The notes beneath the pieces are model-generated. The model was not told the origin of the DNA and searched no databases. It saw only the letters and a program-made list of their open reading frames with translations. Of a stretch of 64,000 bases of DNA, positions 40,741 through 58,986 are shown in pieces. The stretch covers positions 65,930 to 129,929 of the forward strand of contig DF237191.1 in assembly GCA_000708835.1 (NCBI GenBank), in the 5' to 3' direction. The stretch comes from Klebsormidium nitens. Taxonomy: Eukaryota; Plantae; Klebsormidiophyceae. Position 1 is the first letter of the stretch, and every line of letters starts with the position of its first letter. A program made the translations under genes and the position numbers.

Positions 40741-41885
40741 CTTTAGGTACCTACCTATTAGGTATATGAGCATTATATAAGATGTTCCAAGTCGTGCAAT
40801 GTTTCTGCAAAGCACGTGCCAATCTGCCCGGGCCGACGTACGGACGGCCGCCGCTGCTCAGCCTCCTCTCCTGGTCCCGGGCCAGGCTGAGCGGTCACGG
40901 TGCCCGGTCGGACTCGCGCGAGGCCTCGCGGTATTAGGTACCTAGGTAGGTACTCCGTACTGCTCCAGTCTCCATAGTTATCCGGGATCGGGGTTGCATG
41001 GCCGGGAGTCCGGCACCCGGGCGGCCGGGCCGGCCCTCGATTCGCGCACTTTGTGGGCCTCGCGGCCGGGGCCCCGGACCGGGACCCCCCCGGGGCCCCT
41101 AGGGCACTGAGCAGTGAGCAGCCTAGCTGGATGTGCACCGCCGTAAATTTCGATGCGCTGGTCACAATCAAAGTCCTTCTACGAAAATTAATTGGCGTGT
41201 TCAAGGCCCAAGCTAGTGTACTTAATGTACCCCAACACGTGGTTGAGACGCAGCTGCCAGCACCTTGCAAGCTTATATCACAATTAATTCACAGCTCGGC
41301 AAAGGTACACCGGCGCAGGCGTCCCGGACTTCTCGGCCTTGTCTAATGGTATGTACGTGCACATGCTAGGTATGTACTGTGTACACTTGGGACGGCACCC
41401 TTAAAGACGAACGAGGCAGGGTGCAAGGCTTGAGCCCCTGGGGCCTGTACGGTAGGCTGTCAGCCACACTGTAGCTGTGACGGTAAGTTGACGTACACCC
41501 CTTGAAATTCAATGCAGCCACATCAAGTGGGCAATTGCGCTTGCATCACAAACTGATCTGGTGCCGCTTGTTGAACATGTTTTCCAAATTCATCTCTAGA
41601 GTCTACAGCATGCAGCTGGCGCAGGCAAAAGAGACGGGGTGCAACGTACTGCTTTCAGACGCGCAATCCACTTTCCTCCTTGCAAAGATTTTGAATCGAG
41701 TTTGCTGTGACATTGCCAACAATTTTATCCTCTGTTAGCAGTCAAGCCGGCGCAAGCAACGTATAACCTATGCGCTTCTTGCTTGAATGAGGAATGAAGT
41801 AAATGAAATAGGTAGTAGTAAGTCCTCCGTCCATTGCAGGTGTTGGAAGACACTGTAGCGAGCGCTGATCTGCTCCGGAGCAACG

Positions 41886-44800
41886 ATGCAGCTCCTCACA
41901 GCTATCGATGCGCTCTCTCTCTTCCTCGCCCCTCGGGCGGCGCGCGCGGTGCTCGCAGCGGCAGCAGTGTCCCTGGCTCTCTCTACCTTCATAACACATT
42001 CGCTTAGCGCTGGTGACGTCAGGGCCCTGCCGTCCCTCCAAATGGGCGCCAGACTGGTGACGCAGCTCCTGGCGCTGCGGCTTGGCCTTGTTCTCTCAAC
42101 GCTCCTCCACGAGTGGGCCCATTTGGCTGCTGGCGCCGCCATACTCATCACCCGCAAGGCCTTCTGGCTGGAGAAAAACGCACTTGCAAGGGCCTGGTTC
42201 AGCCTGAGCAATGTGCTGGGAAACGTGCCTGTTTCTAGTTGGCTCGCGTGTCTTGTGCCCTTTACCCCCCTCCCAGAAAGCGTGCAGCCTGTGGTGGTGC
42301 TTAGAGGAAAGGGGGCAGCAGAATCTGACAGTCAGTCAGGCCACAAGGGAGGTCATGCTGAGACGGGGTTTTTAGATGCTCAGGACACGTTCGTTCGCCT
42401 TGGGGGGTGGTTTGTCTCCGGAGTATGCTGCGTTTTGATGTGGATGGTTGCGCACAAAGCAGGTGAGAGTGGGTAGCTGCCACTCAATGCCTCTAAGTCT
42501 TGAGTTACTTTTCTGCTTTGCAAGACCTGGCGGTTTTTCCTCCGGCTGCATCCACTGTAAGATGCATCTCAATGCTTCATGGAACCAGGCAAAGAGGTGT
42601 GTTGAGAAGAAAGTAGTGCTGGCTGGATCTATATTGTCTGAAAGACTTGCTCAACACCTACATCCTGTGTATGCAGCTAGAGTGGATGATAGAACCTTTG
42701 GTCGGACCCTGATGCTTCAAAAATAAAAGAACAAGCACTTGACTCAGGCCACATAGCTCTTTCAAGGTTGCAGACGATAATCCAGATGAGTCATCGGTTT
42801 ATTGCCCCTGTTGAAGTAGTCTCAGCTAGGTCATGCGATGAGAATGGTGTTTTCAAAAGTACTTGTTCTGAAACTTACAAAGTACGTCAGAGGATCAAAA
42901 CCCTTAAAACTTGGTATGCTTTGCGTCTTGTCTCCCGCGGGTCTAAACATGTGGCATCGGTTGACTGCGCAGATGGAAACCTGTGGGGCCTGTTCGTCAG
43001 CAATGTGCTAAAGGTAAAGCCACAGAAGTTTCATGCCCAAACTATCTCAACATGCTGAAAAGTTTTGAGCAAACAATGTGCTCTGACCGCAAGGCTTTAA
43101 GCAATGAGTTCTAGCCTGCTTCTTCAATCCCTAATTCTGGCTTCACTCTTTAGTACAATTCTCCGCAACTGCGATGCTCCGTGCTATTGCTTTCTATAAC
43201 AAGGCTTCAAAGCAACCCACATGATTTGAAGGAGGAGTCTTAGGGTTTCCACATTCTGGAGTGATAAGCTCATCAAGAGTACAAGCAGAGCTGATGTTCA
43301 CGGACCTGCAGAGGTGAAGTCGCTGCCAGCAAGTCATTGCGTAGGTCTAGAAAAGGGAATCTGAAGGATGTCTGAGCTTCCAAAGGAGGAATCCAGATGC
43401 TTGGCGAAACAGCATCAGAACCGGGAAGTGTTTCCAGATCCACTACTTCTCTATATGTAGGGCTGTTTGTACACTTTCGCCGGCGCCTGTGCGAGCGACC
43501 TCTACGAAGTCCTGACAGGTAGCGCCACAAAGGGCCACTTCCGCTGCGGTAACTTTGGGCTCATCCTGGTGAAGAGCGTCCGCGAAGGGTGAGCCTTGGG
43601 GCCTCTTCAAAAGTGCTCTTTCATTTTTGCAGCCTCTTATCTCTCTCATTTTGGTTATTACTCTAAAGATAAGACCTGACTCAGCAAACTGGTGCACTCT
43701 AGCGAGATCCCCTTTTGCGGACCTTACTCTCGCTAAAGAAAGGGACCCACATATCAGCCGTTCTTCTGCGAGGAGAGGCGCGGCCGCTTTCATCAGTCAA
43801 CTTGCACATGCTAAAGCTGATTCGATCGGAGAGTCAAGCGAAACATATCGGGCTACACGAACTGCCCCATTGATCATATCCCAGGTTTTCTTTGAACCAC
43901 ACAAGCCATAACGGTTCCCTCAAGCACGACCTACCGTAAACCGTGAACTCCTCCTTATCAAAGAGAACTTTGATTGGCAGACCTCAATCATTCTCCGAGA
44001 ATGCAAGCAAAAGCTGCCTTCTCCACTTGCTTTGCAGGGCGAAGCAGTTGGATATCTTTGCGGCACTGTCGAGCATGTGCGGCATTTCCAGTCAGCGGGG
44101 AGGCCAATCGGGCGGGCTCGTGACGTACGTCAAGAAGTCGGACACGTGCACCGTTGGCGTGCGTGCGAGGATTGTACCCTCCAAGAGAGTGTCCGTGGCT
44201 GACAAGGTGCAGAGAACGACTGATCTAGACGGAAATCGCTTTATATCTGTCACAAAAACCGAAGAAACGATTAGACAAGTGAACTGCGTTTTGAGCGGGA
44301 TTCTTGGCACAAACAAATAAAGGCATTGAGGAATGACAGACTGATAGGTACATTCAAGTTAGCAGCGAATAATGAACCACTGAGATTTGCCGCGTACAAT
44401 TCCTTCGAACTGCGGCAGACTTACACCTGGTCGAGATCCGAAGCGGTCTTTTTGGTTGCTGAAATCCGGAGAGGCCTTCGTCAGGTTTCTTCCTGAACCA
44501 CCGCAAGTTCTCCTCCACATCGCAAAAAAGTCATTCCCGCCGTTTGCCAGAATCACTCATATGACGACCATGCTCATCTCGACTTCTTCAAACTCGACCA
44601 AAACCTACCCCATTAAGACGAGTCTGTCTGAGAGGGGACTGACTCGTGATTACCGCAGACCGTGAGTGAAGAGATCCCTGTCATTTCCAGAAAACATTCC
44701 TCCGGCTAGCTGTGTCAAGGTAAACAATTCCTGTGGCAGCTCCTCTCAACACTCCGGCGCCTCATCTGGTGGGAGAAGGCCAAGGCGAAGCTCACTGGCC

Positions 44801-47800
44801 ACGTCAGCACCGAAGAAAACCCGGTGCAGATGTTCCTAGGGCACACGCGCTTTGCAACCTCGAGGTACGGACAGAATGAACACCTTTCTCTCGATATCCC
44901 ATTTTATCAGAATTACGGCCTCGTTGGAAAATGTTGACTTTTGAAGGTCGTCGTCACGGGCAGCATGCAGTGGACGAAGAGAAGATCCTGAAGTATCCCA
45001 TTTCGCCTGCCCACTCGATTTGGCCTTTGAAACTTTTGTGTGCCTTTTCTTTGCGCATAGCTCCCGATATTACGGCCCGGGTCAGGAACCTTTCAAATGC
45101 CCAGAAGTTTATTGGAGTTCTTCAGGTAGGATGCTTGGAAGAACGACGACCTCATGTCACGCTTCCAAGACGATCAAAATTCTCACTTAAGCCGACTTGC
45201 CTAAAGCTTATAGTATAGTATATAGTTTGCGCCCTGCAACAGCTTATACGTTTCACTTCGAAACCCTGCACCTCATTTCCGGGGGGGCCGGCGTAGCACC
45301 CACGTCACTGACCGTCAGGCAATAAGGGGATGAACAATTTCGCAGGAGGGTCGGTTCGAAGCTTCTGCTGACGTCACTCGTCCGGTGACGGAAAGTTGCA
45401 TTCAGTCACAATCAAGTCACCCTTGGATCATTCTTCACACATACGCCGACGCCCTCATTCAACCATCCTCTAACCCAATTCACTGACCCTCCTCTTTCTC
45501 CCGCAGCATTCCCAGCCCCAACGAGTCGCACCCGCACCAATGGTCCCCCCCCCTCCCCGTCACGCACTGGCAGCACCCCCCCTCGGCGCAAGTTCCCACG
45601 CCCGCCGCCACCCAATTTAGCCTATTTGTCACCCATAACGGCGACTTTGAGTTTTGGAACCTGTACGGTTCGGACCGGACCCACAACGAGATGGCGGCGT
45701 TTTTGGAAAAGGCCCTGTGCCGGCCGGCGCCGGCGCAGTGTGACAGCGTTGTCGTGGCGGGAGTGGTGGAGCTGCTGCGGACACAGGGCCTCTGGGGAGC
45801 AGCGCTGCGTCTCGCCTTCTTTCAAGTGAGCGCCAGACCGGGTCTCATGTATTCTTTGCTCCACGAATTTGGTTCTGTATGATTGATCTGTTTGCTTTTT
45901 TTGACCTCTTCTGAAAGCCGACGAAAATAGGTCGAGGTGTCGCTTTTGTTACCCAACTTAGAGTTTTCAAGTTGGTTTCATGAATCCTTGAAGGGCGAAG
46001 GCCACTCTTGCGTATGAAGAAGTTAGAATCAGCGATTTCAAAACCTGCGACTGAGCAGAAGCATACCGCCGCCTAGACGTTCGTCCTTCCAAACTGTGCC
46101 GAACCCTGTCGGTTTTATGCTTGAATTGTAGAACACTGTTCTCAAGCAACTTTCCAATTTGGACAGTCCACTTCCTGGTTCAGCATTGGCCGCCCCTCTT
46201 TCCCACGTCAAAATGGGCCAATCTTTTGGTCTCGCAAGCTCCCTGATCCATTATTTGTGCCTTTGCCTTCACGTCACGGTACAAACTCGGACCTGGAACG
46301 AGCAGTGTGAGCAAATGTGGCTTCTTTGTACTGATTCTTGCGTACTGTCCGGGTATTACAGACGGTGGTTACCAATTTCTCGGACGTCCTCGACAGCAGC
46401 AATGCAGGCCTTGTCATCCCGGACGCCGCCGCTCAGAAGGCTATGGCCGCTGTTGCCGATGCCGCTTACAAGGCCTTTTTAGAAGGGGCCCAGGAAACCA
46501 CCCCCGACGAAGAGAAGGGCGGGAAAGGGGCGGCCGGCTATGAAGACGGAGAGGGCTTCGCCCGTACGCTATGCCAGGAAATGCGCGCAAACGGACCAGG
46601 TGAGCCTTCGGTAAACATAGATATGAGGTTCTTTCTGCCCAAAATTGGCGTGCAGACGGCCAAAGTAGGGCGCCGATTCTCCCATTACTAGCGAACACTC
46701 AGAAAACCCCATGAATGTTCTTACATGGCATAAGGATTTTCCTTCAGATTCGTTGCTTTCTTGAAAAGAAGCTCTTTTTGTCTGGTCGCAGCTCCCTTGA
46801 AGGCCCTGCCAGAGGCGCAGCTGCAGGCGCTGTGCAGCCAGGCGGTGGTTAACTTCACCGAGAACGACTTGTACACCGCCGTCAAGAAGTTCCTCTTCCG
46901 AGCCAAGGTGAGAGCCAGCCTCTCAGAACTCTGCTCATAAGAGTCCGACGGGTTCATTCGGGCAGCAGAGCCGTGCACAAAAGCGCAGAAGGTGAACCTC
47001 TGCATAGCACGAATACCGAAACGTCAGAAGTATCTCGCCGAGCGTTGAGGTGAGGAATATAAGGCTGAGCGGGTGCGAATTGCAGAGGGTTTGGCTCGTA
47101 AACAAAAAAGAATCGCAACGACAAAGTCGTCTGCCCGTGTCAGATATAATAGAGGGGACGCTTCAATGTGAAACCTGGGCCACTGTGGATATGCAGATGC
47201 ACTCTTGAAGAAGCCCAACATAGCCCGGCCCCATCTCTCGCGTTTGTGATGTGCTCTAAGTCCTGACCATCAAAGAGACGCTGAATGACGTAATACTGCC
47301 TGGTAACACGCACGGAGTCTTTCCGACCTGGCAATCAATGGGCGACTCTAAGGGAAGCCTCGCCTGCTACAAAGCTGCTTTCGTGCTTCATGAACGTGGT
47401 GTCAATTCCGGTGCTGCTCCCTGCAGGGATCCTTTGGGCTGGTCGTCACCACGAGCATTGACACCGATCGCGTGGCCATGGCTGCGTTGAACCAGACCAT
47501 GTCTATGGGCTTCTCGAAGGAGTACCGAACAGTCCTCTACAGGTACTCTTGTCCGAGAGTCTGATTGGCTGGTTACTGCGTTTTGCATTACTCTGGTCAT
47601 TTGATGCCTAGGTATTTGCCTCAGTCAGCTTCCTCAGAAGATCTCGGGAGCGAGAATGCTTCACTGAGAGCCTGAAGCCAGATACAATAAAACAGGCGCA
47701 CAGACTGAACGGCTGATTTGCACACCCTTTGCATGGCCGCCGCCGAGAGCCATTGTGATTAACTTTCACAGATCTCTACAAAATCTGGACGTCCGAGAAT

Positions 47801-50800
47801 GTTTTCATCATCCAGCATCACGCTAACAGCTTCCAAAGCCCACGGAATCTGAACCATTCTCTGCTCCCCGGACTCTGACGGCCAATCTTTTCCCAGTTCC
47901 GAGGCGTGCGGCCTCAAATCGTTCCTGCAACCCGCGGGGAGTTCGGCCACTGTCTCTGAAGACCAAGTGACTCATGTTTTCAACCTCGACGAGGGTGGAG
48001 GGGAGGTTCTGGAAGTCGTGCTTTTGGATGAGAATGCCCCCAAGGGAAGCACGGTGACTGGCGCCTTGTTTCAGGTAAGTACGAGCAAACGCTGTGAGAA
48101 TTTTCTACAAGATGTGTGGGAAGCCGCATCCCTTGAATCCTTTCTGCGCATTTGGGCTACTGAGAACCGGCCCCAATAAATGTAAGCGAGCGGTGAGTCT
48201 GTCTACGAAGCCAGAGGACTTGCCGCTTGACCATCGAAGTTTTCGTATCTCCAGTCGTTGGACGAGTGGATTCTTGGAATTTAGAGTTGCGCCCCTTCGA
48301 AACGAAGCAGGATTGCTTGATCATGCGGCGTCGCGGATTTACCGAAGCAGACCTCCGATTGACCGCTCTGGTGTCCTCGCTTCTCCAGAGAATCGTTCCG
48401 CTACGTTGACACTTTGCACTGCGGCGCCGAGATCGGGTTTTGGACTGTCATGAGTACGCTCGTCGCCTTGAGAAGCTTCGGTGTGGCCGCCATTTCGCCG
48501 ACGGCAACTACGTAGACATGGGTACTTCAAAAGAGGTACAGAGAAGAGCAGACGGTCCTGGGTGGAAGCCACGTGTCACAATGCAAAGATTCCTATCTCA
48601 GAGGAGTGCCACGTGTCACCCATGCAGTTGAACGACTCGTTACAGAGCGGCGCAGCCCTGGCCGCACCCGTGACCGACCAAGCCGCCTTCCTGCACGAAA
48701 CGACCGGCTTCGACCCCTTTGAAGGCACCGCGGCAGCGGCAGGCGATGCCTACGTCAGCATGAAGGTGTACCGGCTCAAGGACCAAGCGACGATGACGCA
48801 GGTACGACTTCGTTCGACTGAAACAATCGTCTGTTGCTCGGGAAACTACGACGTGTTTGCTTTCTCCAGATTCTAGGGATACAAATTAGACAATTGTCTC
48901 GGGTTTAGGCAAATCGAGTAGGGCACAGGTAGCGAAGAAGTGTATCTTAAGTTTAGATGCCTTTGACACCCATTCGGCGCTCACTTTCAACCTCCTTTCC
49001 CTGCCTCGTGGGAACACGTTCGGTTTACGAGATTCTCAGAGCGAGCGACAATATTACGTTTGAAAACCTTTGCATCGAAAGGTGCGCAATGTCTCGCGCT
49101 CCTAAAATGATCTGACGCTGCTCATGCCCTATGTTCTCGAAACGCTGCCCTATGCTTTCAAAAGACATCCAAAATGTTCCACTGTAAGCATCCAACTCTG
49201 AAGCCTCGGAACACCGATAAATCTGCAAGAAAAGTCTTCAAGAGCAGCATCGCGGCCTCGTGCTTCTGGCAAGCTATCTGGCAAAGCTGACTCTCTACTT
49301 AGCCGTTCGTTTCCCCTGTGTAGGCCGACTTCATCAGCTCTGGGCGCTTCACCGCCGTGAGCGATAACGAGTACCTGCCGTTCAAGATCCCGCCCCCAGT
49401 TAAGGACGTCGTGGGCCAGGACATTGCGGTAAGAATAAGTCTCGGTTTTAGTACTTTTAGTTTTTGCAAAGTTGCGCTTGAGGAACGAGATGAAAAGGGG
49501 AAGGACGCACTTTACTGAAACCCCAGAAATTAACTACCTGCTCCGCACCCTTTCCCACCCATCCCGCGAGCTGACCCCCCCCGTCCCCCGGACACTGACA
49601 TTTTTCAGCTTAGCTGTGACATCGGTACTACTGCGGGAAAGAACAGCAGAAGATGGTTCTGCTCATAAGCACTCTCGGTTAAGTGCTTTTTATCCGGGGT
49701 TTAACCAGGGTCGGCTGGTAGCAAGGCCCCTGGCCCCTGGCCGCTAACTAGATTTAGTAGGAACCAAGCAGCTTCGTCGCACTGGAGCCTTTCATTTGGC
49801 CGTGGAAGATCCACCGTTGCTTTGCGCAGAATTTGGCGTCGCGGAAACTGCTTCCATGCAAACTTCTTTGGAAGCTCCTGGATCAACTTATTGCGCGTTC
49901 TTCAACCGAACTTGAGCTTTGAAGGCTTACAGATCCTTTGAATTGAAGCTCTTTGACCTTTTTTAGCCTTCCAGCCCAACGGTTCCAAGGAGACTAGCAA
50001 AACATGCTTCGATGATTGCAGGGACCATTCTATCGTCGAAAGAGGAGAACTCTCTTGCAAGGACTGTGGTGTTCGGAAGGAGTACAGGCGCCTCTAATAC
50101 CCGCCAGCCGCCCGTGCTAATTTCCGCCTCCCTGTCCCATAGGATATCCCCGCCGTCATCTCGGAGATCCGCGCGCAGTGGGCGGACAAGCTGTCCCTCA
50201 ACCGGCGCACCGCGGCCGCGTTCTTCGACGCGCTCAAGGGGCGCGTGCTCGAATACCACCGCGAGCACAAGCGCGAGATGGTGATTGACGTCGTCATCAC
50301 GGGATGCGAGAGCAGCCTCTGGATCGCGGAGCAGTTTGCGTCCGACCTTATGAACAGTACGTCGGCATATCCAAGACCGCTCGTCTTGTTCATCTCTTGA
50401 GCTGACAGTGGGCTTGGGGCTTCCGGTTGAGACCAGAATCAAGATGCAGTCCGTAGGAAGAAATGCGATGCCCTCATAAGACCGTGAATAAGATCTCCTT
50501 GCCAACAGAAGGAAACAGTTCTTGAATGTCGCTGTTCATGTTTTTCCGACGCTGCGCTCGATATTTGACGGCCAATCCCGCTCCATTCCGCACGTGCCAA
50601 TTTCGCATTCCACGGGTATAAGTCCTGCAGAGATTCTCTCTCTTTCAGTCGTCCTGGAATGTACGCTGATGTACGAGCTTCCAACCTGATTCTGAAGTCG
50701 TCCTTGAGAAGGCTTGTCAGAATGGTACTTGTGTCGGAAGGCCTCTATGCTCAGTTAGCCTCCCTGTTCTATCTTCATCCCCACCCTGCAATACTGCTAC

Positions 50801-53800
50801 AGCTCCAACTCAAGATATCGTTGGAATCATGTCCTTAACTAACTCATCCAGGTCTTGGCCCACTGATAAAATGAACCTATCCATGGCCCAGTAACTGAAG
50901 ACGTGCAACCTCGTGCCCCGCAGCGTTCCCCAGCTCTACATCAAGGCCATTTCGTCCAACAAAGCCACCAAAGCAATACCAGAAAAAGCTGCAAAGGTAT
51001 CATTATCCGATTTGCATGCAACAAAACCGTCAACTTTTCTGCCCCGCAGTGTTCCCCCAGCTGTACGTTGCCGCCATATCGTCGAACAAGGTGATCCAGA
51101 TCCTGGGCAGCAACAAGGGGCGCATCTCCGCGGCCGGCTTCGCGTTCGGCAGCCTGGCGCAGTACCTCGACACCGCCGTCGTGCTCTGCATCTCGCAGTC
51201 GGGGCAGACCTTCCCCACCCTGCACGCCACGCGCATCCTCCTCAAGCAGTGCCCGGGGTGAGTCCCCGGTCGATAGCACAGTCTCTGCGAAAGAAGCTCT
51301 CGGCGCTCTGAATTACGGCGAGGTATCTTTTAGCTCGAGCTCTTTACCGCGTGGCTAGGCGTTTAAAGCAGATTCTGCACGCCACGCGCATCCTCCCTCA
51401 AGCAGTGCCGGGGTAAGCTACCGGTCGATGGCAGCGTTTCTGCCGAAGAAGCTCTTCGCGCTCTGAAAATACGTCGAGGTATCTTTTTAGCTCGAACTCT
51501 CTATCGCGTGGTCAGGCGCTTCGATTCCGACCCTGCACGCCGCGCGCATCCTCCTCAAGCAGTGCCCGGGGTAAACCACCGGTCATCATACAGTAGACCT
51601 TCATTTTCGAAGCACCCGTTGGCATGTCGAGAAAAACTCCTTATCGTGTTCGCGGGACGGTCGCTTCCAATCGCAGACACGAACTTCAGAGCCCTGCAGT
51701 ACGCGTGTGGAACGTCAAAAACAGAGTTTCTTTTCGACCTGGCGCCTTGTTCTTGTTTCTGAAGATGTAATTTCCGATTTACCTTTCAATTTTAGGTCGT
51801 TGACTTTCTGGGCAATCATTGAGGCAACCTCATAAGAAATGAAAACTTTTCGGTCGTCTTTCTGAGTTCGTTTACTGATTAAGGTCCTGAGTCCACGCGC
51901 GGCATAACAGATGCACAAACGAAGCGTCATGAAACTTGCGCCTAATCGTTATCGAGTCCTTCTTTCTGCACAATACTCTTCCAGATTCAACCCACTGAAC
52001 CAGTTCTCGGAAACACCAGAGAATAAAGAGCGAACAGGAAAGCAGGGTCTAGCAAACCCATCATCTTTTCCCATTTCCCCAGGCGCGTGTTCGTGTGCGT
52101 GGGCATGATCGACAGCAAGATGAGCGAGGTCGTGGGCCAGAGCAGCACAAAAGGCGCGCCCTTTTGCGCGCGCATCTTCACCAACTGCGCGGGCTGGCGC
52201 GTCGCGGAGCCCGCCAGTGTCTCGTGCGTGGCGACCCATCAGACCCTCACGGAGCTCATGCTCTTCCTGGCGCGGCAAATGCAGGTAAGCGGCGCAGGAA
52301 ACTTGTCCAAGCGACGCTTGATCAAGAGGGCGCGCCCCCCCCACCTTGCTCTACGGCGACACAATAACCTGGACACCTGACAGAGTGTCGCTGCGAGTCT
52401 GAAAAAATGGAGCCCCCGCTATCTGATCGCGGGGACAAAGGGTGTTATGGTGCCCTCGGTTGACAAGCGTTGATGTGCTTCCTTTCGTCAGCGGAACGGT
52501 CTCTGGCTTGGGACCGGTTTCTGATCTTAGAATTGCCGCATCATAATGGTGTCCTTTATCTGCGGGTTTCCTTTGCTTTATTGTCAGATTTTGTCCTGCT
52601 TTGAAAATCTTTGAAGATCTTTAAAGTTTCGCAACATGTCAGCCCGCTTATGATACAAACATTCTGGCCTTGCGGTCACTTTGCCAATGCAAAGCAACTC
52701 TGTTAGTTAACAGTCTTCCAGCCTTTCCGTTTGACATCACCGGCCTTCTCAAAGAGCACCCCGTTCTGGTTCCTGCAAAACCCTGCATAACCCCGCTGGT
52801 CATCTTCGCACATTGGATATGGAATCGCATCCGCTGGGCATGCGGATGAGCATCAAAGACGTCATTCTCACAAACCTGCAATTCCGTGGTTATCCTCGCC
52901 GGTTAGCGTCGGCATCGCAAACCCGCTGGCATGCGGATGAGCTTCAGAACCTTAAAATCCTACAAACCCGGCATATCCGTGGTTATTTCGCAGGTTAACT
53001 TTGGCCTCGCAAATCCGCTGGGCATGCGGCTGAGCATCAAAGACGTGCGGGATGTGGAGGCGGTTAACCAGGTGTTTGGGGTGGGGGTCGGCGAGCTGAC
53101 GGGAGAGAACCCGGACGCAACCGTCTATAAGGATCTCATAGCCCAAGGCCGACACGTAAGCGATCCTTTCATTTCCTGTTCCGGTTTTCTTTATCTGTTT
53201 TGCATTCAACACAACGAATTGAATCCTAGAGATCATTGAGGAGGCTATCTGAATACAGGCAACTGCTACACAGAAGCCAGCGCGTGAGCGATTCGCATTT
53301 CTGGAGTTCCGACCTTTACGGCCTGGGTTCATACCTCTCATGAAGCTAAGCTCTGCACTCCATAGAACCCAAATCGCCGCGACCGTTCACAGAGACAATC
53401 TACAAGGTCGCGCACATATCCGGTGACTAGAGTCCTGGAAGACAGGCGGACGATCTGGCTCGTTTGACCATTTTCAAAGAAAGATCTGGGAGGTCTAAGA
53501 GAGTCGCTTTCGCCCACGGATCTGACCCTGTGGTTAGCAACCTTAATTGAATCGTAAAACCCTGTCCGAGTTGCTTTTGCTCCGGCCGCAGTGGGGGTGG
53601 CACATCCTGGAGGGCCCCATCGTGTGGCTCATGTGCGCGGCTTACATCATCGGCACCGTGACGTCACACTTCCCGCTGTTCCACGACATCTGGCTGCTGC
53701 TCCAGCTGGGCTTCGGTAAGGTTCCGTGCGATCGACGCAAGGGCTGATAACCCCAGAGCGTCCTGTGAATCTCCGATTGAGAAGCTCTGTTTGCAAACAT

Positions 53801-56800
53801 CACATAAGGAAGAAACCCCAATCATTCCGCTCCGTCTAGTGGAGGATATCAGAAATTACTCATGACCGCTCTCCGGAGTGATACGATTGTGTAACCCAGA
53901 TACTCGGGAGTACTTTCCAGACCTTCGAATTGCAAAGGCCAAACCTTGGAGAAGTCTCCAGTTGCAGGTGGCCTGCCTGAAGGACTATTCCCTCGGCGCC
54001 TCAAGATTTGGGCTTCTCAATATCTTCGATAGCTAAGACGCTTGAGTTCCAAGCCTCGTCGTTTGAGTGTTCCGTCACTCAAGGTTTGGGCTGGGTCGTT
54101 GCTTGCGAAGGAGCCCATATTTCGCACTTGATTGGACGAGCCAAGATGGCCCCGTATCTGATGACCACTTTGTTTTAGGACAGAAACAGAAATATCAGTC
54201 GACGCAGGAGACGAGGTCAAAACGCACCTTGTTCCTGAACTTGCAAGATGAGTAATCCAGATTTCAACGGTCCAAATCTTCCACTCGCAGGCGGCCCCGC
54301 GAAGACGACCCTGTTCTGGTGGGCGTCGTTCGTGGACTCGCTGTTCTACCTGTTCCTTCCGCTCATGATGACGCTGCTCCTGCGGCTGGTCCAGCGGCGG
54401 AAGCTGCTCGCGCGCATCGGGAAGCGCACGCTTGTCATCTGTGACGTACCGTACGTGCACCAGCTGCTCGAGATCTACGTCTCCAAGCTCGTGAGTCTGT
54501 AGCATTTTCTGGCCCGGGTATGCTTTTTGCAACGACTCAAAGCGATGGAACGCTTTGCGTGACAGTCTTCTAAAGCTTCGTACAGGACTTTCAGGCTGCG
54601 CGACGCCCAGCTGATGTGGTACCCTTGTGTGTGCGTCCCTTGTGCGCGTCACCTAATCAGGAGGCGCTGGATGATGGGAGAATTGCGGAGGGAAGGGCGA
54701 AAAGATCAGCTCTGTATTTGAGAAAAAAGTAGGTGCCCAGAGGCCCCAGGAGGTATCGAACAGCTCGGATGCGATGTGCGTGAAGATGGACAAATTACAA
54801 GCAAGTGGTAAGAGTGGCGGGCTTTGATCAGGAGAGCTACTGGACGTTGGTATGGTGCAGAACTGATCGAGGAGGTGTAGATACCAGAACGAGAAGGCGA
54901 GACGAAAGCTCAACTCAAACGTAAAGGACCGGGAAGCTGATGGGATTCTTAAAACTTGTGCAGTTTGCGCTGAGCTACTCGATTGCCAGCATAGACGTGC
55001 ACGGGGCCAACCCCCTGGACCACTTGGTACACCGCTTTACGCACCGGGTCACCAGGTGAGGACGTTTGCGAGGAATTTTCTGGTACCTGGGTCGCATTAG
55101 ATTTGGAAGGAATCTGAAAAGCGATTTGGATTTCAATCGAGATCCAAAAAAATCGCACTTGCGAAGACGCGAGAGATGCATCGACAATCTGATTTGAATT
55201 CTCCTTTACCTGCTCTCACATCGAGATACATTCAATCTTGAGGGGCTTTAGAGGCTTAGGGTTTCAGCCTTTGCAGGGCGGTCGCCTTTAATTTGACTGG
55301 ACTTTTGTAGATCCTTTGCGCTCGTAAAGAGACCATAGGAGCATGCTTGCCTTTCGGAACTTTTTCCTGTGCAGTGCTTGGGGAAAAGAGAGATCGAAGC
55401 GCAAGCTCAGAAAGGTTTCAAAACCTTCCTTGTAATGTTCTCGACGTCATTCTGTGTCACTTTGCAGAACTGGATTGACGGAAATGTTTGCTTACTTGCG
55501 CAGGGGAGTTCTTCTTGCTGTTGGGAGACCCGACGGTCGCTTCACCACACAGACAAAGAGTGAGCACAGAGCGATTGTAGTGACTATCTTCGGTTTTTCT
55601 GCTTCTTTCCTTTGCCGCCTGCCATTGTTTTCAAATGTTTCGGATCGTCAAGACGTGCGGTACTATCCAACGATGTTTGCCGCTTCGATGCACGCGCTTA
55701 CGTAGAGTGGCGCAGAACGCTGTGGCGTCACCATCTGATGTGAAGCGTCCTATGGAGCATCCGGTCAATCCGCCCACTTGCAAGCATTTGTCTTAAAACT
55801 CAATGCAAAATTCGTTTCCTCATCTTTTCCACGGTTTCAAAAAGAAAGTGTCGGTGGAGATAGAGTCTTTCTGTTGTCAACAAGTACACACAAACCCCTT
55901 GACCACGTTTCCGTCTGCTTTCTTGTAGACGAGGCCTGGGTGCTTATGGCCCTGCTGCAAGCGAAGAGCATCGTCAACCTAGGGGTTGGGGCGGAGACGC
56001 TGACTGTTGGTACGGCACACAGATCTGTTTGTTGAGAACTTTGATCCGAAACTATTGCCACTTTCTTGTTGTGGTGCAAAGCACGGTTCTGCCATGTTCG
56101 GACGCAGATTCGTGCTACTTCCCTTGCGCAGTGACTCTCAATAGAAGAAAAAAGTGTTCTGACAGCCGATAAAGAGAGCCGAATATGTCTCACGAGCTTT
56201 GCTAGCAGCCTGAGCACTTGCAAGATCCTTGCTCCTGACTCTGTCAGCTGTCAAGTCATTGCATACTTAGCCGATTCCGCAATCAGATCTCCTATTGCTG
56301 ATCGCATATCGCTGTCCATCCTTGTATGCAGGCCATAACCTGTACTCCGTCAAGATGATCATGGATAAGCACATCACCATCCCGTCTCGTCGCCCAAGGT
56401 TCATCTGCGAGGCGATCTTGGGGGATGCCGAGGCAGAGCCGGTAAGCGATGCTTCGAGTAAAAAATCTCAAGCGGCTTGGAGCCCTTTAAAACGCTTGCA
56501 AGAAGATAAACCCCCAGAGTACGCGCTTTTATAAAGCTATGAAAGGTGTCTAATCGCGGATTTGCGCTGGAAACCACCGAACGAGGGCCGGTTTAAGCGG
56601 TCTATCCTCTCCGAAACGTCTGGTCACTGGAGGTGATACGTAGCGCCTTTGCGAAAGAAGAACGATCAATCAGCGAAGGGTACTCAATCTGCACTATTCT
56701 GCTCTGCATCCGAATCGAAGCATTCATCCACCGAGCGCCCGCGAACGTGATCTGAAACGGTCAATGGCGTCACTCGAGTGCCCGACCGAAATCTCAAAAG

Positions 56801-58986
56801 GAAAGCGGGGCTACTAAGATTGAAATGACGGTTAACCTTAGTTAACCACCGGTTCCCCGTCCCAGATGCGCCTGTCGGCCCGCCAGCGCGCCATCACCGA
56901 AGGACAACACGGCGACGCCTCTTTCTACGACGACATCAACAAGAGCGTCGTGGGGGGTCATCTGCTCGACTCGGCGCCCGTCAGAAAAGCCCGCCGCCGC
57001 ATCGTGAGGCCTAGGCCCACGTTTCCTTTTGAACTCTTTGCTGCGTGCGTTTTCTGGAGCGCTACTTGATTGGGGTCTGCCCATGGAAGCTTCGACTTCG
57101 ATTCGAGCCGCTGTAGGCCTTGCGTCGCCGCCTTAAACTCAGTCACAAAAGCGACCGCTCCAATTGGGCTGCGTACTGCTCCTACAACTTGAAACCGGGG
57201 TCAACAAAGCAATCAAAGGACCGTAGTTGTTGGCAGCTCACCCGATTCCGCTGATAGGTGGACTGCCGGTCCGCTTTTCCTCCGTTGCAGCAGCGTCGTT
57301 TCCATTACGTATCCAAGTCACCCTGAGCTTTCTCCGTCTCCTGCTGGCTCCTTCTGCAGAAAGCCCAGCTGAAGCAGAACGCGCTCGCGCACACCCAGAG
57401 CGTTCGCCTCACCGGGGAATCCGTTCCGGTCCTCAATTCCGAGGGGCTGCCCGTGGCGGAAGCCCCCGAGGAGCGGAATCAGCTCCTGAGCACTCTCCCC
57501 GCGGAGGTCCAGGCCATCTTCGACTCGCAGGCGCCGCTGGAAGAACTGGTGGACAACCGGTTCCTCTCGCTGCAGCGCTACATTTCGTTCCTGGTACGTT
57601 ATGCGTTTCGTATAAGAGCCCAGAAACGAATATCAGTCCTTTGCGGGGTGGGACTAGGAAGGCTGTTCAAAGACAAGTGCTGCGCAGCTCTTGCGGCGGG
57701 GCGAAAATGAACCGTTCACTTTTACGCCTGGCAATCTAGTTGCGAGGGCTGGATGAGAACTCGGCAGACGGGCCCAGATACAGCCTTTTCGACTCAAATC
57801 ATTTTCCCTCGCCGAGAATCGTGAAATTTTCTGCGGAACCTTCCATCATTGCCGTTTCTGGTGTCCTGAGCGTCTTGCCCATACGTCTCCCTCCGGAAGC
57901 AACTCTCGGGGACCGACCTTCTCTGTTTGTTCTTCGTATTCTTCATCGCCTATTAAAAGGACGCACTGTTTGCGGACTCACTCCCTGGCAAAATTCGAAC
58001 GGGCACCTCCAATAATTCCTCTCCAGTTATGTTCTCTTTACCGTGTGCCCGTTCCCTGTGCACCGTTCTTACAGCCAGCGGACCAGCGTCTCTGGTCATT
58101 CCTCTCCCCGGGCACCGTTTACGACAGCACCTTTCTCTTCTCCGCTTTTTTCCCGGGCACCAGTCTCTCCGGTTTGCCGGTAAGTGGTCAGCTGTGTCCT
58201 AACCTGGAGATTATTCCTGGGTAAATTCCAGGTGATTTTCCACGAGATGGCCCGCCGAGTGTCCTCCTTTTGGCCCCTCAACTTCGACATGCACCGCAGC
58301 CAGTCCGAGCTCCGGATCGCCACCACCGCAGGTGAGGATCGAGGCGGAATAGCGGAACAGCGGAATGATTGAACCGCGGGCACGCTATGTACCTTATAAG
58401 CACAAGTTGTGGAACACGAAGGGAAAATGATTAACGATTCGCGCTGTGATGTAATAACGTAAGGCTCCGTTACCGGTAGAGGTCTGAGTATTCTCCCACG
58501 GAAATACCAGCTTGTGTTCGACGGCTTGCAGTGTTTCGAGACTCTTTTTGCGACTCTTGATTTGCAAACGCTTGATTCTGAGGGCCTCGTCTTGAGATCG
58601 TCTCGAGTGAACCTCGGCGTTCCGTTTGCCGGTTCCGTGCAGAGGAAACGGAATGCTCTTTCCTCAACCCCTGATTTCCTTGGAGTGGTCTAGGATACTG
58701 TTGCCCACAGTCGAGAAATCCCGAGCTGAAATTGCTGACGTAAATGGTCCCTTCTTGGTTTGCCCCTGCAGCCCCGGTTTCCGCGGCGGAACTGGAGCGC
58801 GAGTGGGAGGAGAGCCAGGATCCGGCGGAAGACGACGACACCCTGGCCATGTCCTTCAAGTCCGTCAGCGCACATCTCATGAGCGTCACGCGCCTCGGCA
58901 GCCGTAGCAGCTCGCTACTGCGCGAAATGAAGAAAGTCAAGGAAGAAATGGACGCGGCGGAAGCCGCCGCGTCCCCCGCCATGTGA
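41886..58986 (+). CDS. ~1470-aa membrane protein: HExxH (M50-like) domain, class II glutamine amidotransferase (Ntn) domain and SIS-like domains (GlmS/GFAT-like, function unknown)
   Basis: 26 GT-AG exons that chain in frame: 41886-42461, 42973-43013, 43459-43589, 44039-44206, 44740-44863, 45507-45825, 46370-46610, 46791-46906, 47429-47541, 47898-48075, 48628-48801, 49324-49428, 50143-50356, 51050-51257, 52083-52284, 52994-53155, 53592-53715, 54291-54490, 54964-55055, 55504-55559, 55929-56009, 56332-56441, 56866-57003, 57360-57593, 58232-58331, 58772-58986. Motifs: HEWAH, CGNFG, RGGQSGG, GHTRFATS, NESHPH, THNGDF, CDS, GSFG, TGCESS, SQSGQT, AEPAS. Confidence 0.85.
51219..51585 (+). repeat. Three-copy ~155-bp tandem repeat spanning an exon 3' end and donor site
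   Basis: ctgcacgccacgcgcatcctcctcaagcagtgcccgggGT recurs at ~51220, ~51376 and ~51533. The first two copies continue with near-identical intron sequence. Confidence 0.85.
52783..53045 (+). repeat. Three-copy ~92-bp tandem repeat spanning an acceptor and exon 5' end
   Basis: cgca(a)(a)tccgctgggcatgcgg(a/c)tgagc(a/t)tca recurs at ~52826, ~52917 and ~53008. Only the last copy keeps tttcgcag as an intact acceptor. Confidence 0.85.

What the first reader, a model, noticed from the sequence alone, without database searches (positions are those of the whole stretch)
41886..58986. GlmS-like amidotransferase whose catalytic Cys is masked by an N-terminal HExxH (M50-like) membrane domain: a possible self-activating enzyme
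Seen in sequence: exon 1 encodes hydrophobic segments with HEWAH (42108-22). Exon 3 has ASDL followed by FRCGNFGLIL (Cys codon 43545-47). Downstream come RGGQSGG, GHTRFATS, NESHPH, THNGD and DS, then SIS-type TGCESS and SQSGQT, and additional hydrophobic helices (exons 53592-53715 and 54291-54490). Established knowledge: class II (Ntn) amidotransferases such as GlmS, PurF and AsnB need Cys as the free N-terminal residue, their GHxR, N-xHP, HNG and DS motifs bind glutamine, and the SQSGET loop of GlmS binds sugar phosphate. Here the CG motif lies about 235 residues inside the chain. Inference: the Zn-peptidase-like domain, or autoproteolysis, cleaves before Cys to switch on a membrane-anchored sugar-phosphate aminating enzyme or sensor. 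The C-terminal DMHRSQSELRIATT aligns loosely with GlmS DVDQPRNLAKSVT, with Arg at the catalytic Lys position, which suggests different chemistry. I recall similar uncharacterised proteins in cyanobacteria and algae, which hints at lateral or endosymbiotic origin (unverified).
Basis: partly seen in the sequence, partly recalled or inferred. Interest (0 to 1): 0.8.

Follow-up and report, generated by a model that had tools for sequence, protein, structure and literature searches.

The report
Amidotransferase fused behind membrane protease domain
This green-alga gene encodes a large membrane protein whose catalytic cysteine, which must become the first residue for a GlmS-type glutamine amidotransferase to work, lies 234 residues inside the chain behind a small site-2-protease-like zinc domain; the fusion is kept across many algal groups and may be a built-in activation switch, but cleavage is untested.

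Summary
The window is Klebsormidium nitens, and the gene is deposited as "putative type II glutamine amidotransferase".

- **Transcript:** spliced RNA contigs from four studies join exon 1 (HEWAH) through a 41-nt exon 2 to exon 3 (ASDL…RCGNFG). An in-frame stop lies just upstream of the ATG at 41886.
- **N-terminal domain:** about 60 homologues were found, all with a named source from eukaryotic algae. In the 32 with a full N-terminus, H75, E76, H79, D219 and C235-G-N-x-G are invariant.
- **Glutaminase fold:** the predicted fold after Cys235 matches GFAT-1 and GlmS (Z 21.8 and 19.4).
- **Protease-like fold:** residues 1–234 form four or five membrane helices. Their best matches are site-2 proteases (M50, M50B, DUF3267), by PDB profile search, two structure searches, per-member Pfam scans and language-model features. 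Each match is weak; together they agree.
- **Docking:** in the model, the three residues before Cys235 pair with the domain's only other β-strand, as an S2P substrate would.
- **SIS half:** supported only weakly.

Self-activation by the protease domain is the best reading (about 0.45) but is inference only. No cyanobacterial relatives were found. First readers of this scan noted the same architecture on another piece of this genome (a paralogue).

The parts
41886..58986 (+). Whole coding region: 26 exons, 1473 aa. Exons: 41886-42462, 42973-43013, 43461-43588, 44038-44206, 44740-44864, 45507-45825, 46362-46599, 46792-46907, 47427-47542, 47897-48074, 48628-48801, 49324-49428, 50143-50356, 51050-51257, 52083-52284, 52994-53155, 53592-53715, 54291-54490, 54964-55055, 55504-55559, 55929-56009, 56332-56441, 56866-57003, 57360-57593, 58232-58331, 58772-58986.
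   Evidence: Joints of exons 1-9 come from RNA contigs. Exons 1-24 reproduce deposited protein P0001 exactly. The last two exons come from homologue tblastn, splice sites and the match to the family's C-terminal consensus.
41840..41885 (+). 5' UTR part of the first coding exon. It follows an acceptor AG at 41838-39 and holds an in-frame TGA at 41856-58. An upstream non-coding exon is spliced on.
   Evidence: RNA contig with a 27-nt loose end before 41839; sequence.
41886..43544 (+). N-terminal membrane domain, aa 1-234 (exons 1, 2 and the start of exon 3), S2P/M50-like. Helices 17-41, 49-89 (HEWAH), 162-191 (GGWFVS) and 196-225 (ASDL); β-strands 136-138 and 232-234.
   Evidence: AF2 model with pLDDT 80 and pTM 0.75. 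PDB profile hits to RseP and SpoIVFB. Structure matches to SpoIVFB, RseP and mjS2P. Atlas M50 clusters. Pfam M50, M50B and DUF3267 in other family members.
42108..42122 (+). HEWAH (His75, Glu76, His79): the putative zinc site and catalytic Glu, inside a membrane helix.
   Evidence: Invariant in A2. Aligned to HEFGH of E. coli RseP and of A. aeolicus RseP.
43497..43499 (+). Asp219 of ASDL, the putative third zinc ligand, near the C-terminal end of the last helix of the domain and 16 residues before Cys235.
   Evidence: Invariant in A2 and at least 90% conserved in A1.
43545..43547 (+). Cys235 codon: the predicted Ntn nucleophile. The putative scissile bond is Arg234|Cys235.
   Evidence: C-G-N-x-G is invariant in 39 sequences. 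Aligned to Cys1 of E. coli GlmS.
43545..48074 (+). Class II glutaminase domain, aa 235 to about 655 (exons 3-10), with a family-specific helical insert at about aa 455-570.
   Evidence: VIA Z 21.8 to GFAT-1, 19.4 to GlmS and 17.7 to PurF. Foldseek E 2e-5.
50143..56441 (+). SIS-like half, aa about 763-1245. It includes TGCESS (50299-50316), SQSGQT (51193-51210) and the family motif DHLVHRFTHRVTRG…GRPDGR (55018-55540).
   Evidence: 31% mean column identity in the family. PDB profile top hits are SIS proteins at E 0.12. Pfam SIS in 9 of 31 members. Atlas features point to SIS.
53592..54490 (+). Two conserved hydrophobic helices (aa 1029-1047 and 1078-1096), inserted between the two SIS-like parts. 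They would keep the enzyme in the membrane after any N-terminal cleavage.
   Evidence: Hydropathy; conserved in homologues.
58232..58331 (+). Conserved C-terminal tail exon (…FHEMARRVSSFWPLNFDMHRSQSELRIATTA), missing from the deposited protein model.
   Evidence: tblastn of ten homologues, up to 71% identity. Splice sites.

Best explanation
**Architecture.** The gene encodes the precursor of a membrane-anchored, GlmS-like class II (Ntn) glutamine amidotransferase. Residues 1-234 form a minimal site-2-protease-clan zinc metallopeptidase of four or five membrane helices. His75, Glu76 and His79 lie in one membrane helix and Asp219 in the last. This domain is fused directly in front of the catalytic Cys235.

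**Proposed mechanism.**
1. The segment just before Cys235 lies in the peptidase's substrate groove as an added β-strand.
2. The zinc site cuts the Arg234|Cys235 bond, in cis or between protomers.
3. The cut creates the free N-terminal Cys that class II glutaminases need. The enzyme stays in the membrane through its two C-terminal helices.
4. Ammonia from glutamine is then passed to an acceptor bound by the divergent SIS-like half. The acceptor is probably a phosphorylated sugar, but it is not established to be fructose-6-phosphate.

**Shown:** the transcript structure, conservation of the fusion and its motifs, the glutaminase fold, and the S2P-like fold and sequence signal.

**Inferred:** zinc binding, proteolytic activity, the cleavage site, and the acceptor.
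For: **Transcript.** Spliced RNA contigs of four studies join the HExxH exon to the Cys exon.

**Conservation.**
- HExxH lies 94-260 residues before CGNxG in 39 of 45 homologues from green algae, haptophytes, diatoms and a cryptophyte.
- H75, E76, H79, S178, D219, C235, G236, N237 and G239 are invariant.
- The annotated Gonium model lacks the domain, but the exons for it lie upstream in the genome.

**S2P likeness.**
- Four of the eight PDB profile hits are S2Ps, at E 0.058-0.69.
- SpoIVFB, two RseP structures and mjS2P all rank in the top 12 of 48,161 chains (Z 5.6-6.5, 130-140 residues aligned).
- The two best ESM-Atlas shape matches are Peptidase_M50 clusters.
- Pfam M50, M50B and DUF3267 are the commonest weak hits among members.
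- hhalign puts HExxH, the β-loop strand and the next helix in register with RseP.

**Docking and topology.**
- The 250-residue model has only two β-strands, 136-138 and 232-234, so they must pair with each other. That places P3-P1 on the loop that hhalign aligns to RseP's GGYVKM segment.
- Helix order puts HExxH, Asp219, the β-loop and the linker to Cys235 on the same membrane face.

**Glutaminase.** The fold and all glutamine-binding motifs are intact, so a free Cys is needed.

**Natural control.** The one member without the domain, from Diacronema, starts Met-Cys-Gly-Asn.

**Precedent.** TmcP is a four-helix DUF3267 S2P-clan enzyme shown to be a site-specific leader peptidase (PMC13712780).
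Against: - No experiment or proteomic datum shows cleavage.
- Ntn enzymes with propeptides are generally thought to process themselves (my own knowledge), so a protease is not required.
- Each S2P match is weak on its own: Z under 8, E above 0.01, and nothing from Foldseek. The K. nitens protein itself hits no Pfam family.
- The LDG and Pro hallmarks of M50 are replaced by (T/S)DL without Pro.
- Model coordinates could not be read, so no distance from the scissile bond to the zinc ligands was measured.
- Residues 236-249 have pLDDT under 50 in the 720-residue model.
- A whole protease domain kept for a single cut is costly.
- The Diacronema case is one sequence, on a very long branch, with an unverified gene model.
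Confidence: 0.45

Rival explanations
1. Ntn autoproteolysis. Cys235 attacks its own preceding peptide bond, as in other Ntn hydrolases. The S2P-like domain is thereby released, or stays associated, as an independent intramembrane protease with other substrates. The fusion would couple the supply or activation of the protease to folding of the amidotransferase, or simply co-target the two.
For: The Ntn fold and nucleophile are intact. Short propeptides of PurF and glutamate synthase are removed without a known protease (my own knowledge). The peptidase active-site residues are invariant, which fits any active protease role. The residue before Cys varies (F, L, H, R, W, Y…), as expected if no protease specificity is needed.
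Against: It does not explain why the domain is always directly upstream of the Cys, with a short linker (median 18 residues from Asp to Cys). It does not explain why the pre-Cys residues are modelled on the peptidase's β-loop. It does not explain why the only member lacking the domain has Cys right after Met.
Confidence: 0.25
2. No cleavage. The protein is a regulated intramembrane protease whose GlmS-like part is a metabolite-sensing module for glutamine or a sugar phosphate. The module would be analogous to the CBS domain of SpoIVFB or the PDZ domains of RseP, and would control cleavage of other membrane proteins.
For: S2Ps commonly carry a regulatory domain (my own knowledge). Diatom-clade members add EF-hands, which suggests signalling. 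The SIS half has lost recognisable GlmS catalytic residues and gained its own invariant His/Arg motif.
Against: Every glutaminase catalytic and glutamine-binding residue is invariant or nearly so, which is not needed for binding alone. The Diacronema member keeps the GATase and SIS parts without the protease.
Confidence: 0.15
3. The HExxH domain is a non-proteolytic membrane anchor or metal-binding module, a pseudo-protease. The Cys is exposed by some unrelated cellular protease.
For: The M50 hallmarks LDG, Pro and GPxxN are altered. All database matches are below family thresholds.
Against: His, Glu, His and Asp are invariant across lineages as far apart as streptophytes and diatoms. Pseudo-proteases usually lose such residues. 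The C-terminal helices already anchor the protein.
Confidence: 0.1

Closest known systems
GlmS / GFAT (glutamine–fructose-6-phosphate amidotransferase)
   Same: The class II Ntn glutaminase fold matches (Z 21.8, rmsd 2.7 Å, 238 residues to human GFAT-1; Z 19.4 to E. coli GlmS). Cys aligns to Cys1, RGGQSGG to RGYDSAG, and GHTRFATS…HPH to AHTRWATH…HPH. The glutaminase is followed by a SIS-like half with an SxSGxT loop.
   Different: - The Cys is at position 235, behind a membrane domain.
- Two membrane helices split the SIS-like half.
- No Pfam GATase or SIS hit for this protein, and no GlmS hit by profile at E ≤ 1.
- By hand alignment of the family consensus with GlmS (my own reading), Lys485 looks kept, while Glu488, His504 and Lys603 are not evidently kept.
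- The family has its own invariant DHLVHRFTHR…GRPDGR motif and a long C-terminal extension.
Site-2 proteases, MEROPS clan MM (M50: RseP, SpoIVFB, mjS2P; M50B; DUF3267 such as TmcP)
   Same: HExxH lies inside a membrane helix, followed by a β-loop, a second helix and an Asp in a later helix. The domain has a four-helix core like most DUF3267 proteins (PMC13712780). Fold and weak sequence matches agree.
   Different: It is fused in cis to its presumed substrate. The Asp motif is (T/S)DL rather than LDG, and the upstream Pro is missing. GWxxS replaces GPxxN. It is below every family threshold. It occurs in eukaryotic algae only. No activity is known.
Ntn amidotransferases made with a propeptide (B. 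subtilis and vertebrate PurF, bacterial glutamate synthase large subunit)
   Same: The catalytic Cys is internal in the precursor and must be exposed by removal of what precedes it (my own knowledge).
   Different: Those propeptides are roughly 10-40 soluble residues with no enzyme motif. Here the 'propeptide' is 94-380 residues, membrane-embedded, and carries an invariant metallopeptidase site.

Membership tests
Class II (Ntn) glutamine amidotransferase | Four-layer αββα Ntn glutaminase fold | tested here: met
   AF2 model residues 240-714 against GFAT-1: Z 21.8, 2.7 Å, 238 aligned. GlmS 19.4, PurF 17.7, EgtC 14.1, AsnB 12.8. Foldseek E 2e-5.
Class II (Ntn) glutamine amidotransferase | Nucleophile Cys at the position of Cys1, plus glutamine-binding Arg (GHTR), Asn-Gly (HNG) and Asp (DS) | tested here: met
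   hhalign puts Cys235 on GlmS Cys1 and GHTRFATS…HPH on AHTRWATH…HPH. C235, G236, N237 and G239 are invariant. R342, H390-N391-G392-D393 and D426-S427 are invariant in the 10-sequence alignment A5, and R342 and S427 are at least 90% conserved in A1. HNG and DS were assigned by motif, not by the hhalign segment.
Class II (Ntn) glutamine amidotransferase | Cys is the free N-terminal residue of the mature protein | not testable with these tools
   In the precursor it is residue 235. N-terminal sequencing or proteomics is needed.
Class II (Ntn) glutamine amidotransferase | Match to a curated family model (Pfam GATase_2, GATase_6 or GATase_7) | tested here: not met
   No GATase family at E ≤ 1 for this protein or any of 39 members. 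The public name presumably rests on another profile.
GlmS-type isomerase (two SIS domains) | SIS fold and family model | tested here: inconclusive
   Pfam SIS appears in 9 of 31 members (best E 0.0047) but not in K. nitens. PDB profile top hits are SIS proteins at E 0.12. Atlas features score 0.82-0.87 for SIS clusters. hhalign reaches only 2% probability.
GlmS-type isomerase (two SIS domains) | Catalytic Lys485, Glu488, His504 and Lys603 of E. coli GlmS | tested here: inconclusive
   By hand alignment of the family consensus to GlmS, an invariant Lys fits Lys485, Ala falls at Glu488, and His504 and Lys603 are ambiguous. No significant alignment covers this part.
Peptidase M50 / S2P clan (MEROPS MM) | HExxH inside a transmembrane helix | tested here: met
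   HEWAH at aa 75-79 lies in helix 49-89, pLDDT over 90. It is invariant and aligned to the RseP HEFGH.
Peptidase M50 / S2P clan (MEROPS MM) | Distal Asp ligand in a later membrane helix, within the NxxPxxxLDG motif | tested here: inconclusive
   Asp219 is invariant, in helix 196-225. However, the motif is (T/S)DL, with no Pro or Asn upstream.
Peptidase M50 / S2P clan (MEROPS MM) | S2P core fold | tested here: met
   8vjl Z 6.5 over 130 residues, 7w6z 6.3/136, 9j83 6.1/140 and 3b4r 5.6/138 are all within the top 12 of 48,161 chains. 3b4r scores Z 6.6 from the larger model. The Atlas top two are M50 clusters, TM 0.44/0.59. The Z values are middling for helical proteins, and Foldseek found nothing.
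Peptidase M50 / S2P clan (MEROPS MM) | Match to a curated family model above threshold | tested here: not met
   K. nitens has no hit. Among 39 members, M50 appears in 8 (best 0.024), M50B in 6 (best 4.3e-4) and DUF3267 in 1 (0.0084).
Peptidase M50 / S2P clan (MEROPS MM) | Zinc-dependent intramembrane proteolysis | not testable with these tools
   Needs biochemistry.

The most novel reading that the evidence does not exclude
A site-2-protease-type intramembrane zinc peptidase acts on its own polypeptide to create the N-terminal nucleophile of an Ntn amidotransferase. This would be a protease-gated way of switching on a glutamine-using membrane enzyme. It would be conserved from streptophyte algae to diatoms, possibly calcium-regulated there through EF-hands, and would have an acceptor chemistry different from GlmS.
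Probability: 0.4. Interest if true: 0.85.

Novelty: new variant of a known kind. Interest (0 to 1): 0.72.

Why it matters
Class II amidotransferases are textbook enzymes whose nucleophile is exposed by Met removal or by loss of a short propeptide. Site-2 proteases are known as trans-acting signalling or maturation proteases.

A conserved fusion of the two, with the protease directly in front of the nucleophile, would be a new maturation logic for Ntn enzymes. It would also be the first S2P-type domain dedicated to its own chain.

The family is widespread in ecologically dominant algae: green algae, haptophytes, diatoms and cryptophytes. Land plants did not appear among the named hits. It has no Pfam assignment and I found no literature on it. 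It therefore marks an unstudied, probably membrane-bound, glutamine-dependent step in algal nitrogen or sugar metabolism.

The hypothesis is directly testable with tagged constructs and point mutants.

Tried and rejected
- **Pfam on single exon pieces and on whole P0001:** nothing.
- **Word search with exon 1 alone:** nothing, because of the length window.
- **Foldseek of the N-terminal model against PDB:** only helical-bundle noise.
- **Profile of the whole C-terminal half against PDB:** swamped by calmodulins, because diatom members carry EF-hands. Redone on a trimmed alignment.
- **hhalign against single E. coli GlmS and RseP sequences:** register-consistent but low-probability alignments.
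- **First genome-contig scan with A1:** Redone with A5.
- **A paralogue inside the window:** none.
- **Bacterial origin:** rejected for lack of any credible prokaryotic member. Only two peptide patterns were scanned, so this is not an exhaustive exclusion.
- **Mutually exclusive exons as the source of the RNA loose ends at 45766 and 46895:** rejected, because the sequences are not in the window.
- **Literature searches on the fusion:** nothing.
- **Tree placement of the Diacronema member:** unreliable, end branch 2.46.

Full report
**What is there**

The window is from the streptophyte alga Klebsormidium nitens. An exhaustive HMMER search with exon 1 returned a 100% identical 1418-residue protein (P0001). 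NCBI names it [quoted passage not shown].

| Motif | Window coordinates |
|---|---|
| HEWAH | 42108-42122 |
| ASDL (Asp219 at 43497-43499) | 43491-43502 |
| Cys235 codon | 43545-43547 |
| RGGQSGG | 44096-44116 |
| GHTRFATS | 44839-44862 |
| NESHPH | 45520-45537 |
| THNGD | 45631-45645 |
| TGCESS | 50299-50316 |
| SQSGQT | 51193-51210 |
| Hydrophobic exons | 53592-53715 and 54291-54490 |

**Is the N-terminal part really in the same protein?**

Yes.

- Contigs of public runs from four separate studies were laid on 41700-47699. They show eight GT..AG joints that chain exon 1 (to 42462), a 41-nt exon 2 (42973-43013), exon 3 (43461-43588, carrying ASDL and RCGNFG) and exons 4-9 (boundaries checked). 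Spliced joints can only come from RNA, so the gene is expressed as read.
- The first coding exon begins at 41840 after an acceptor AG. An upstream non-coding exon is spliced on, seen as a 27-nt loose end.
- The exon holds an in-frame TGA at 41856-58 before the ATG at 41886. The reading frame therefore cannot start further upstream, and nothing suggests a start near the Cys.
- Some contigs cover introns (42466-42774, 44475-44704). I take these for unspliced precursor RNA.

**Gene model**

- The deposited protein maps to 25 exons with exact translation.
- Its last exon (58075-58221) is not supported. Ten homologues instead match 58226-58330 in another frame, at up to 71% identity.
- With the acceptor before 58232, the donor after 58331 and the acceptor before 58772, the model becomes 26 exons and 1473 residues, ending at 58986.
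- The resulting tail, …RIATTAAPVSAAELER…, fits the family consensus …RIATTASPVSGADVR.
- Exons 10-26 have no read support here, because the one read-laying run was used on the 5' part.

**The family**

- Word and profile searches found about 60 relatives. Named sources are Closterium, Mesotaenium, Volvox, Gonium, Chlamydomonas incerta, Pycnococcus, Chrysochromulina, Diacronema, Thalassiosira and Hemiselmis. The rest are unnamed transcriptome and metagenome entries.
- No ordinary GlmS or PurF came up at E ≤ 0.001, so the family is distinct.
- A tree of the SIS-like half splits a green clade from a haptophyte and diatom clade.
- No Pfam family is precomputed for any member, except EF-hands in the diatom clade.
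- A pattern scan of 185,579 prokaryotic species genomes gave one locus, in a "Verrucomicrobiaceae MAG". Its 1203-residue ORF carries HETCH…ATDL…FRCGNFG. It loses similarity exactly at the …YVSKL exon boundary of K. nitens, and its neighbour is a type III glutamine synthetase broken into pieces. I read it as a misbinned, intron-poor alga. No cyanobacterial relative was seen.

**The glutaminase domain**

- An AlphaFold2 model of residues 1-720, built from a 39-sequence alignment, has mean pLDDT 77.
- Foldseek finds GFAT-1, GlmS and PurF at E 2e-5 and weaker.
- The VIA second look gives Z 21.8 (2.7 Å, 238 residues) to human GFAT-1. It also gives 19.4 to the E. coli GlmS glutaminase domain, 17.7 to PurF, and lower values to EgtC, AsnB and GltS. 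The matches cover model residues 240-714.
- hhalign against E. coli GlmS puts Cys235 on Cys1, RGGQSGG on RGYDSAG and GHTRFATS…HPH on AHTRWATH…HPH.
- C235, G236, N237 and G239 are invariant in 39 sequences. R269, H340-T345, H355-P356-H357 and S427 are at least 90% conserved. H390-N391-G392-D393 and D426 are invariant in the 10-sequence alignment A5.
- The fold and catalytic set of a class II Ntn glutaminase are therefore present. Yet no Pfam GATase model matches at E ≤ 1.
- An insert at about residues 455-570 is family-specific.

**The N-terminal domain**

Conservation:
- In 32 sequences with a complete N-terminus, H75, E76, H79, S178, D219 and the CGNxG residues are the only invariant columns.
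- HExxH lies 94-260 residues before the Cys in 39 of the 45 members that have at least 100 residues there. The six exceptions start inside or after the HExxH helix and look truncated.
- The annotated Gonium protein starts five residues before the Cys. The genome upstream nevertheless encodes …ALHELAHVAAA…, …VRHAGWVAS… and …AIASDLLG….

Five kinds of search point to the site-2 protease clan:
1. **PDB profile search.** Four of the eight hits are S2Ps: A. aeolicus RseP (0.058), E. coli RseP (0.29), K. koreensis RseP (0.4) and SpoIVFB (0.69).
2. **Exhaustive structure alignment.** A separate AF2 model of residues 1-250 (pLDDT 80, pTM 0.75) was aligned to 48,161 PDB representatives. SpoIVFB (Z 6.5, 130 aligned), K. 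koreensis RseP (6.3, 136), A. aeolicus RseP (6.1, 140) and mjS2P (5.6, 138) all fall in the top 12, with the longest alignments in the list. mjS2P also appears at Z 6.6 from the 720-residue model.
3. **ESM-Atlas shape search.** The two best matches are Peptidase_M50 clusters, one of which also carries M50B and DUF3267.
4. **Per-member Pfam scans.** The commonest weak hits are Peptidase_M50 (8 of 39, best 0.024), M50B (6, best 4.3e-4) and DUF3267 (1, 0.0084).
5. **Language-model features.** The nearest named clusters are DUF3267, M50 and M50B, at scores of 0.76-0.79, which count as a lead only.

Additional points:
- hhalign against E. coli RseP puts HEWAH on HEFGH, the PVVVL strand on GGYVKM, and GGWFVS on GPVANF.
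- Each result is weak, and Foldseek alone finds nothing. All agree, however, and I accept "S2P/M50-like" as the fold.
- Membership in M50 proper is not established. The LDG and Pro hallmarks are replaced by (T/S)DL, and no curated threshold is reached.

**Geometry, as far as it can be read**

- In the 250-residue model the only β-strands are 136-138 and 232-234. Since DSSP strands need a partner, they pair with each other.
- Residues 232-234 are P3-P1 of the putative Arg234|Cys235 bond. Strand 136-138 lies in the loop between the HExxH helix and the next helix. This is the position of the membrane-reentrant β-loop on which S2Ps bind substrates by strand addition (my own knowledge of the RseP and SpoIVFB work).
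- Helices 162-191 and 196-225 are joined by four residues. The β-loop, the C-terminal end of the HExxH helix, Asp219 (six residues from its helix end) and the linker to Cys235 are therefore all on one face of the membrane.
- Residues 236-249 are poorly defined in the long model, as might be expected if the segment has to move after cleavage.
- This fits substrate-like docking of the pre-Cys segment. It does not prove cleavage.

**A natural control**

- The Diacronema lutheri member begins Met-Cys-Gly-Asn-Leu-Gly.
- The roughly 600 bp up to the neighbouring TatD gene contain stops in frame and nothing like the N-terminal domain.
- So where the domain is missing, the Cys sits where Met removal exposes it, as expected if the domain's job is to expose the Cys.
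- It is a single, very divergent sequence (end branch 2.46) with an unverified model.

**The C-terminal half**

- It is the best-conserved part, with 31% mean column identity and 44 invariant columns.
- The evidence for SIS is weak but consistent:
  - the two best PDB profile hits are SIS proteins, at E 0.12 over the SxSGxT loop;
  - Pfam SIS is the commonest hit among members (9 of 31, best 0.0047);
  - language-model features point to SIS and GlmS clusters at 0.82-0.87;
  - hhalign puts ISQSGQT on LSQSGET.
- Two conserved hydrophobic helices (aa 1029-1047 and 1078-1096) lie between the two SIS-like parts.
- The second part carries an invariant …K…DHLVHRFTHR..RG…GRPDGR… motif that GlmS lacks.
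- By hand alignment the Lys fits GlmS Lys485, but Glu488 falls on Ala.
- The acceptor substrate is therefore open.

**Mechanism and rivals**

| Reading | Weight | Main basis |
|---|---|---|
| The S2P-like domain cuts before Cys235, in cis or between protomers, and so activates a membrane-held amidotransferase | about 0.45 | Invariant zinc-site residues, constant position just before the Cys, the modelled docking, the Diacronema case, and the TmcP precedent (a four-helix DUF3267 S2P-clan enzyme shown to be a site-specific leader peptidase; PMC13712780) |
| Ntn autoproteolysis, with the protease serving another role | about 0.25 | Ntn enzymes with propeptides are thought to process themselves |
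| An uncleaved protease with a metabolite-sensing GlmS-like module | about 0.15 | S2Ps often carry regulatory domains; EF-hands in the diatom clade |
| A pseudo-protease anchor | about 0.1 | Altered M50 hallmarks; matches below threshold |

Nothing here shows cleavage.

**Novelty**

- I found no paper on this fusion.
- Databases name only the amidotransferase part, and the protease-like domain is unannotated.
- The components are known kinds. The architecture and the implied activation logic are not, hence "new variant of a known kind".
- First readers of this scan noted the same architecture on another piece of this genome (s1-332526). RNA loose ends at 45766 and 46895 come from a similar transcript that is not in this window, which is consistent with a paralogue.

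**Limits**

Noticed in passing
window 58075-58986: The deposited protein model (P0001, 1418 aa) ends in a 147-nt exon at 58075-58221 that no homologue supports. It misses the conserved exon 58232-58331 and the final exon 58772-58986. The corrected product is 1473 aa.
   Followed up: yes
window 45766 and 46895 (loose ends of RNA contigs): In all four runs a contig matches 45766-46895 (spliced) at 95% or more. It continues on both sides with different sequence (…HCDSVMIGGL before, ANAKGSFGLA… after) that is absent from the window. It is probably a paralogous transcript that shares a near-identical stretch, possibly by gene conversion.
   Followed up: partly
L002:1-8717 (JAIYDP010000129.1, 'Verrucomicrobiaceae MAG'): This contig, filed as bacterial, carries a family member whose ORF runs into an intron at the conserved …YVSKL exon boundary. 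Head to head with it is a type III glutamine synthetase split into several ORFs. It is probably a misbinned green-algal contig. The glutamine synthetase neighbour may or may not be meaningful.
   Followed up: partly
L005:2515-4063 (Gonium pectorale LSYV01000002.1): The annotated Gonium protein (P0014) starts five residues before the Cys. The HELAH, GWVAS and ASDL exons lie 0-1.5 kb upstream of its annotated start, so the model is truncated.
   Followed up: yes
L004:3300-4060 (Diacronema lutheri JAGTXO010000006.1): This family member begins Met-Cys-Gly-Asn and has no protease-like domain in the short gap to the next gene. It is the only such case seen, and it sits on a very long branch.
   Followed up: partly
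homologues P0017, P0019, P0020, P0027-P0029, P0031-P0036: Members of the diatom-containing clade carry a pair of EF-hands between the SIS-like half and the conserved C-terminal tail. K. nitens has none. This hints at calcium control in that clade.
   Followed up: no
window 54482-55540 (aa 1130-1175): There is an invariant family motif, SKLFA.SYS…DHLVHRFTHRV.RG…GRPDGR, rich in His and Arg and with no counterpart in GlmS. It may be a metal or phosphate site that defines the unknown acceptor chemistry.
   Followed up: no
window 42466-42774 and 44475-44704: Short RNA contigs lie wholly inside introns 1 and 4. They are probably unspliced precursor or retained introns. They were not examined for any separate small transcript.
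   Followed up: no
window 43551-43553 (Asn237): The third residue after the putative cut is an invariant Asn (CGNFG), where GlmS and PurF have Ile or Val. It is family-specific and might matter for recognition or processing.
   Followed up: no
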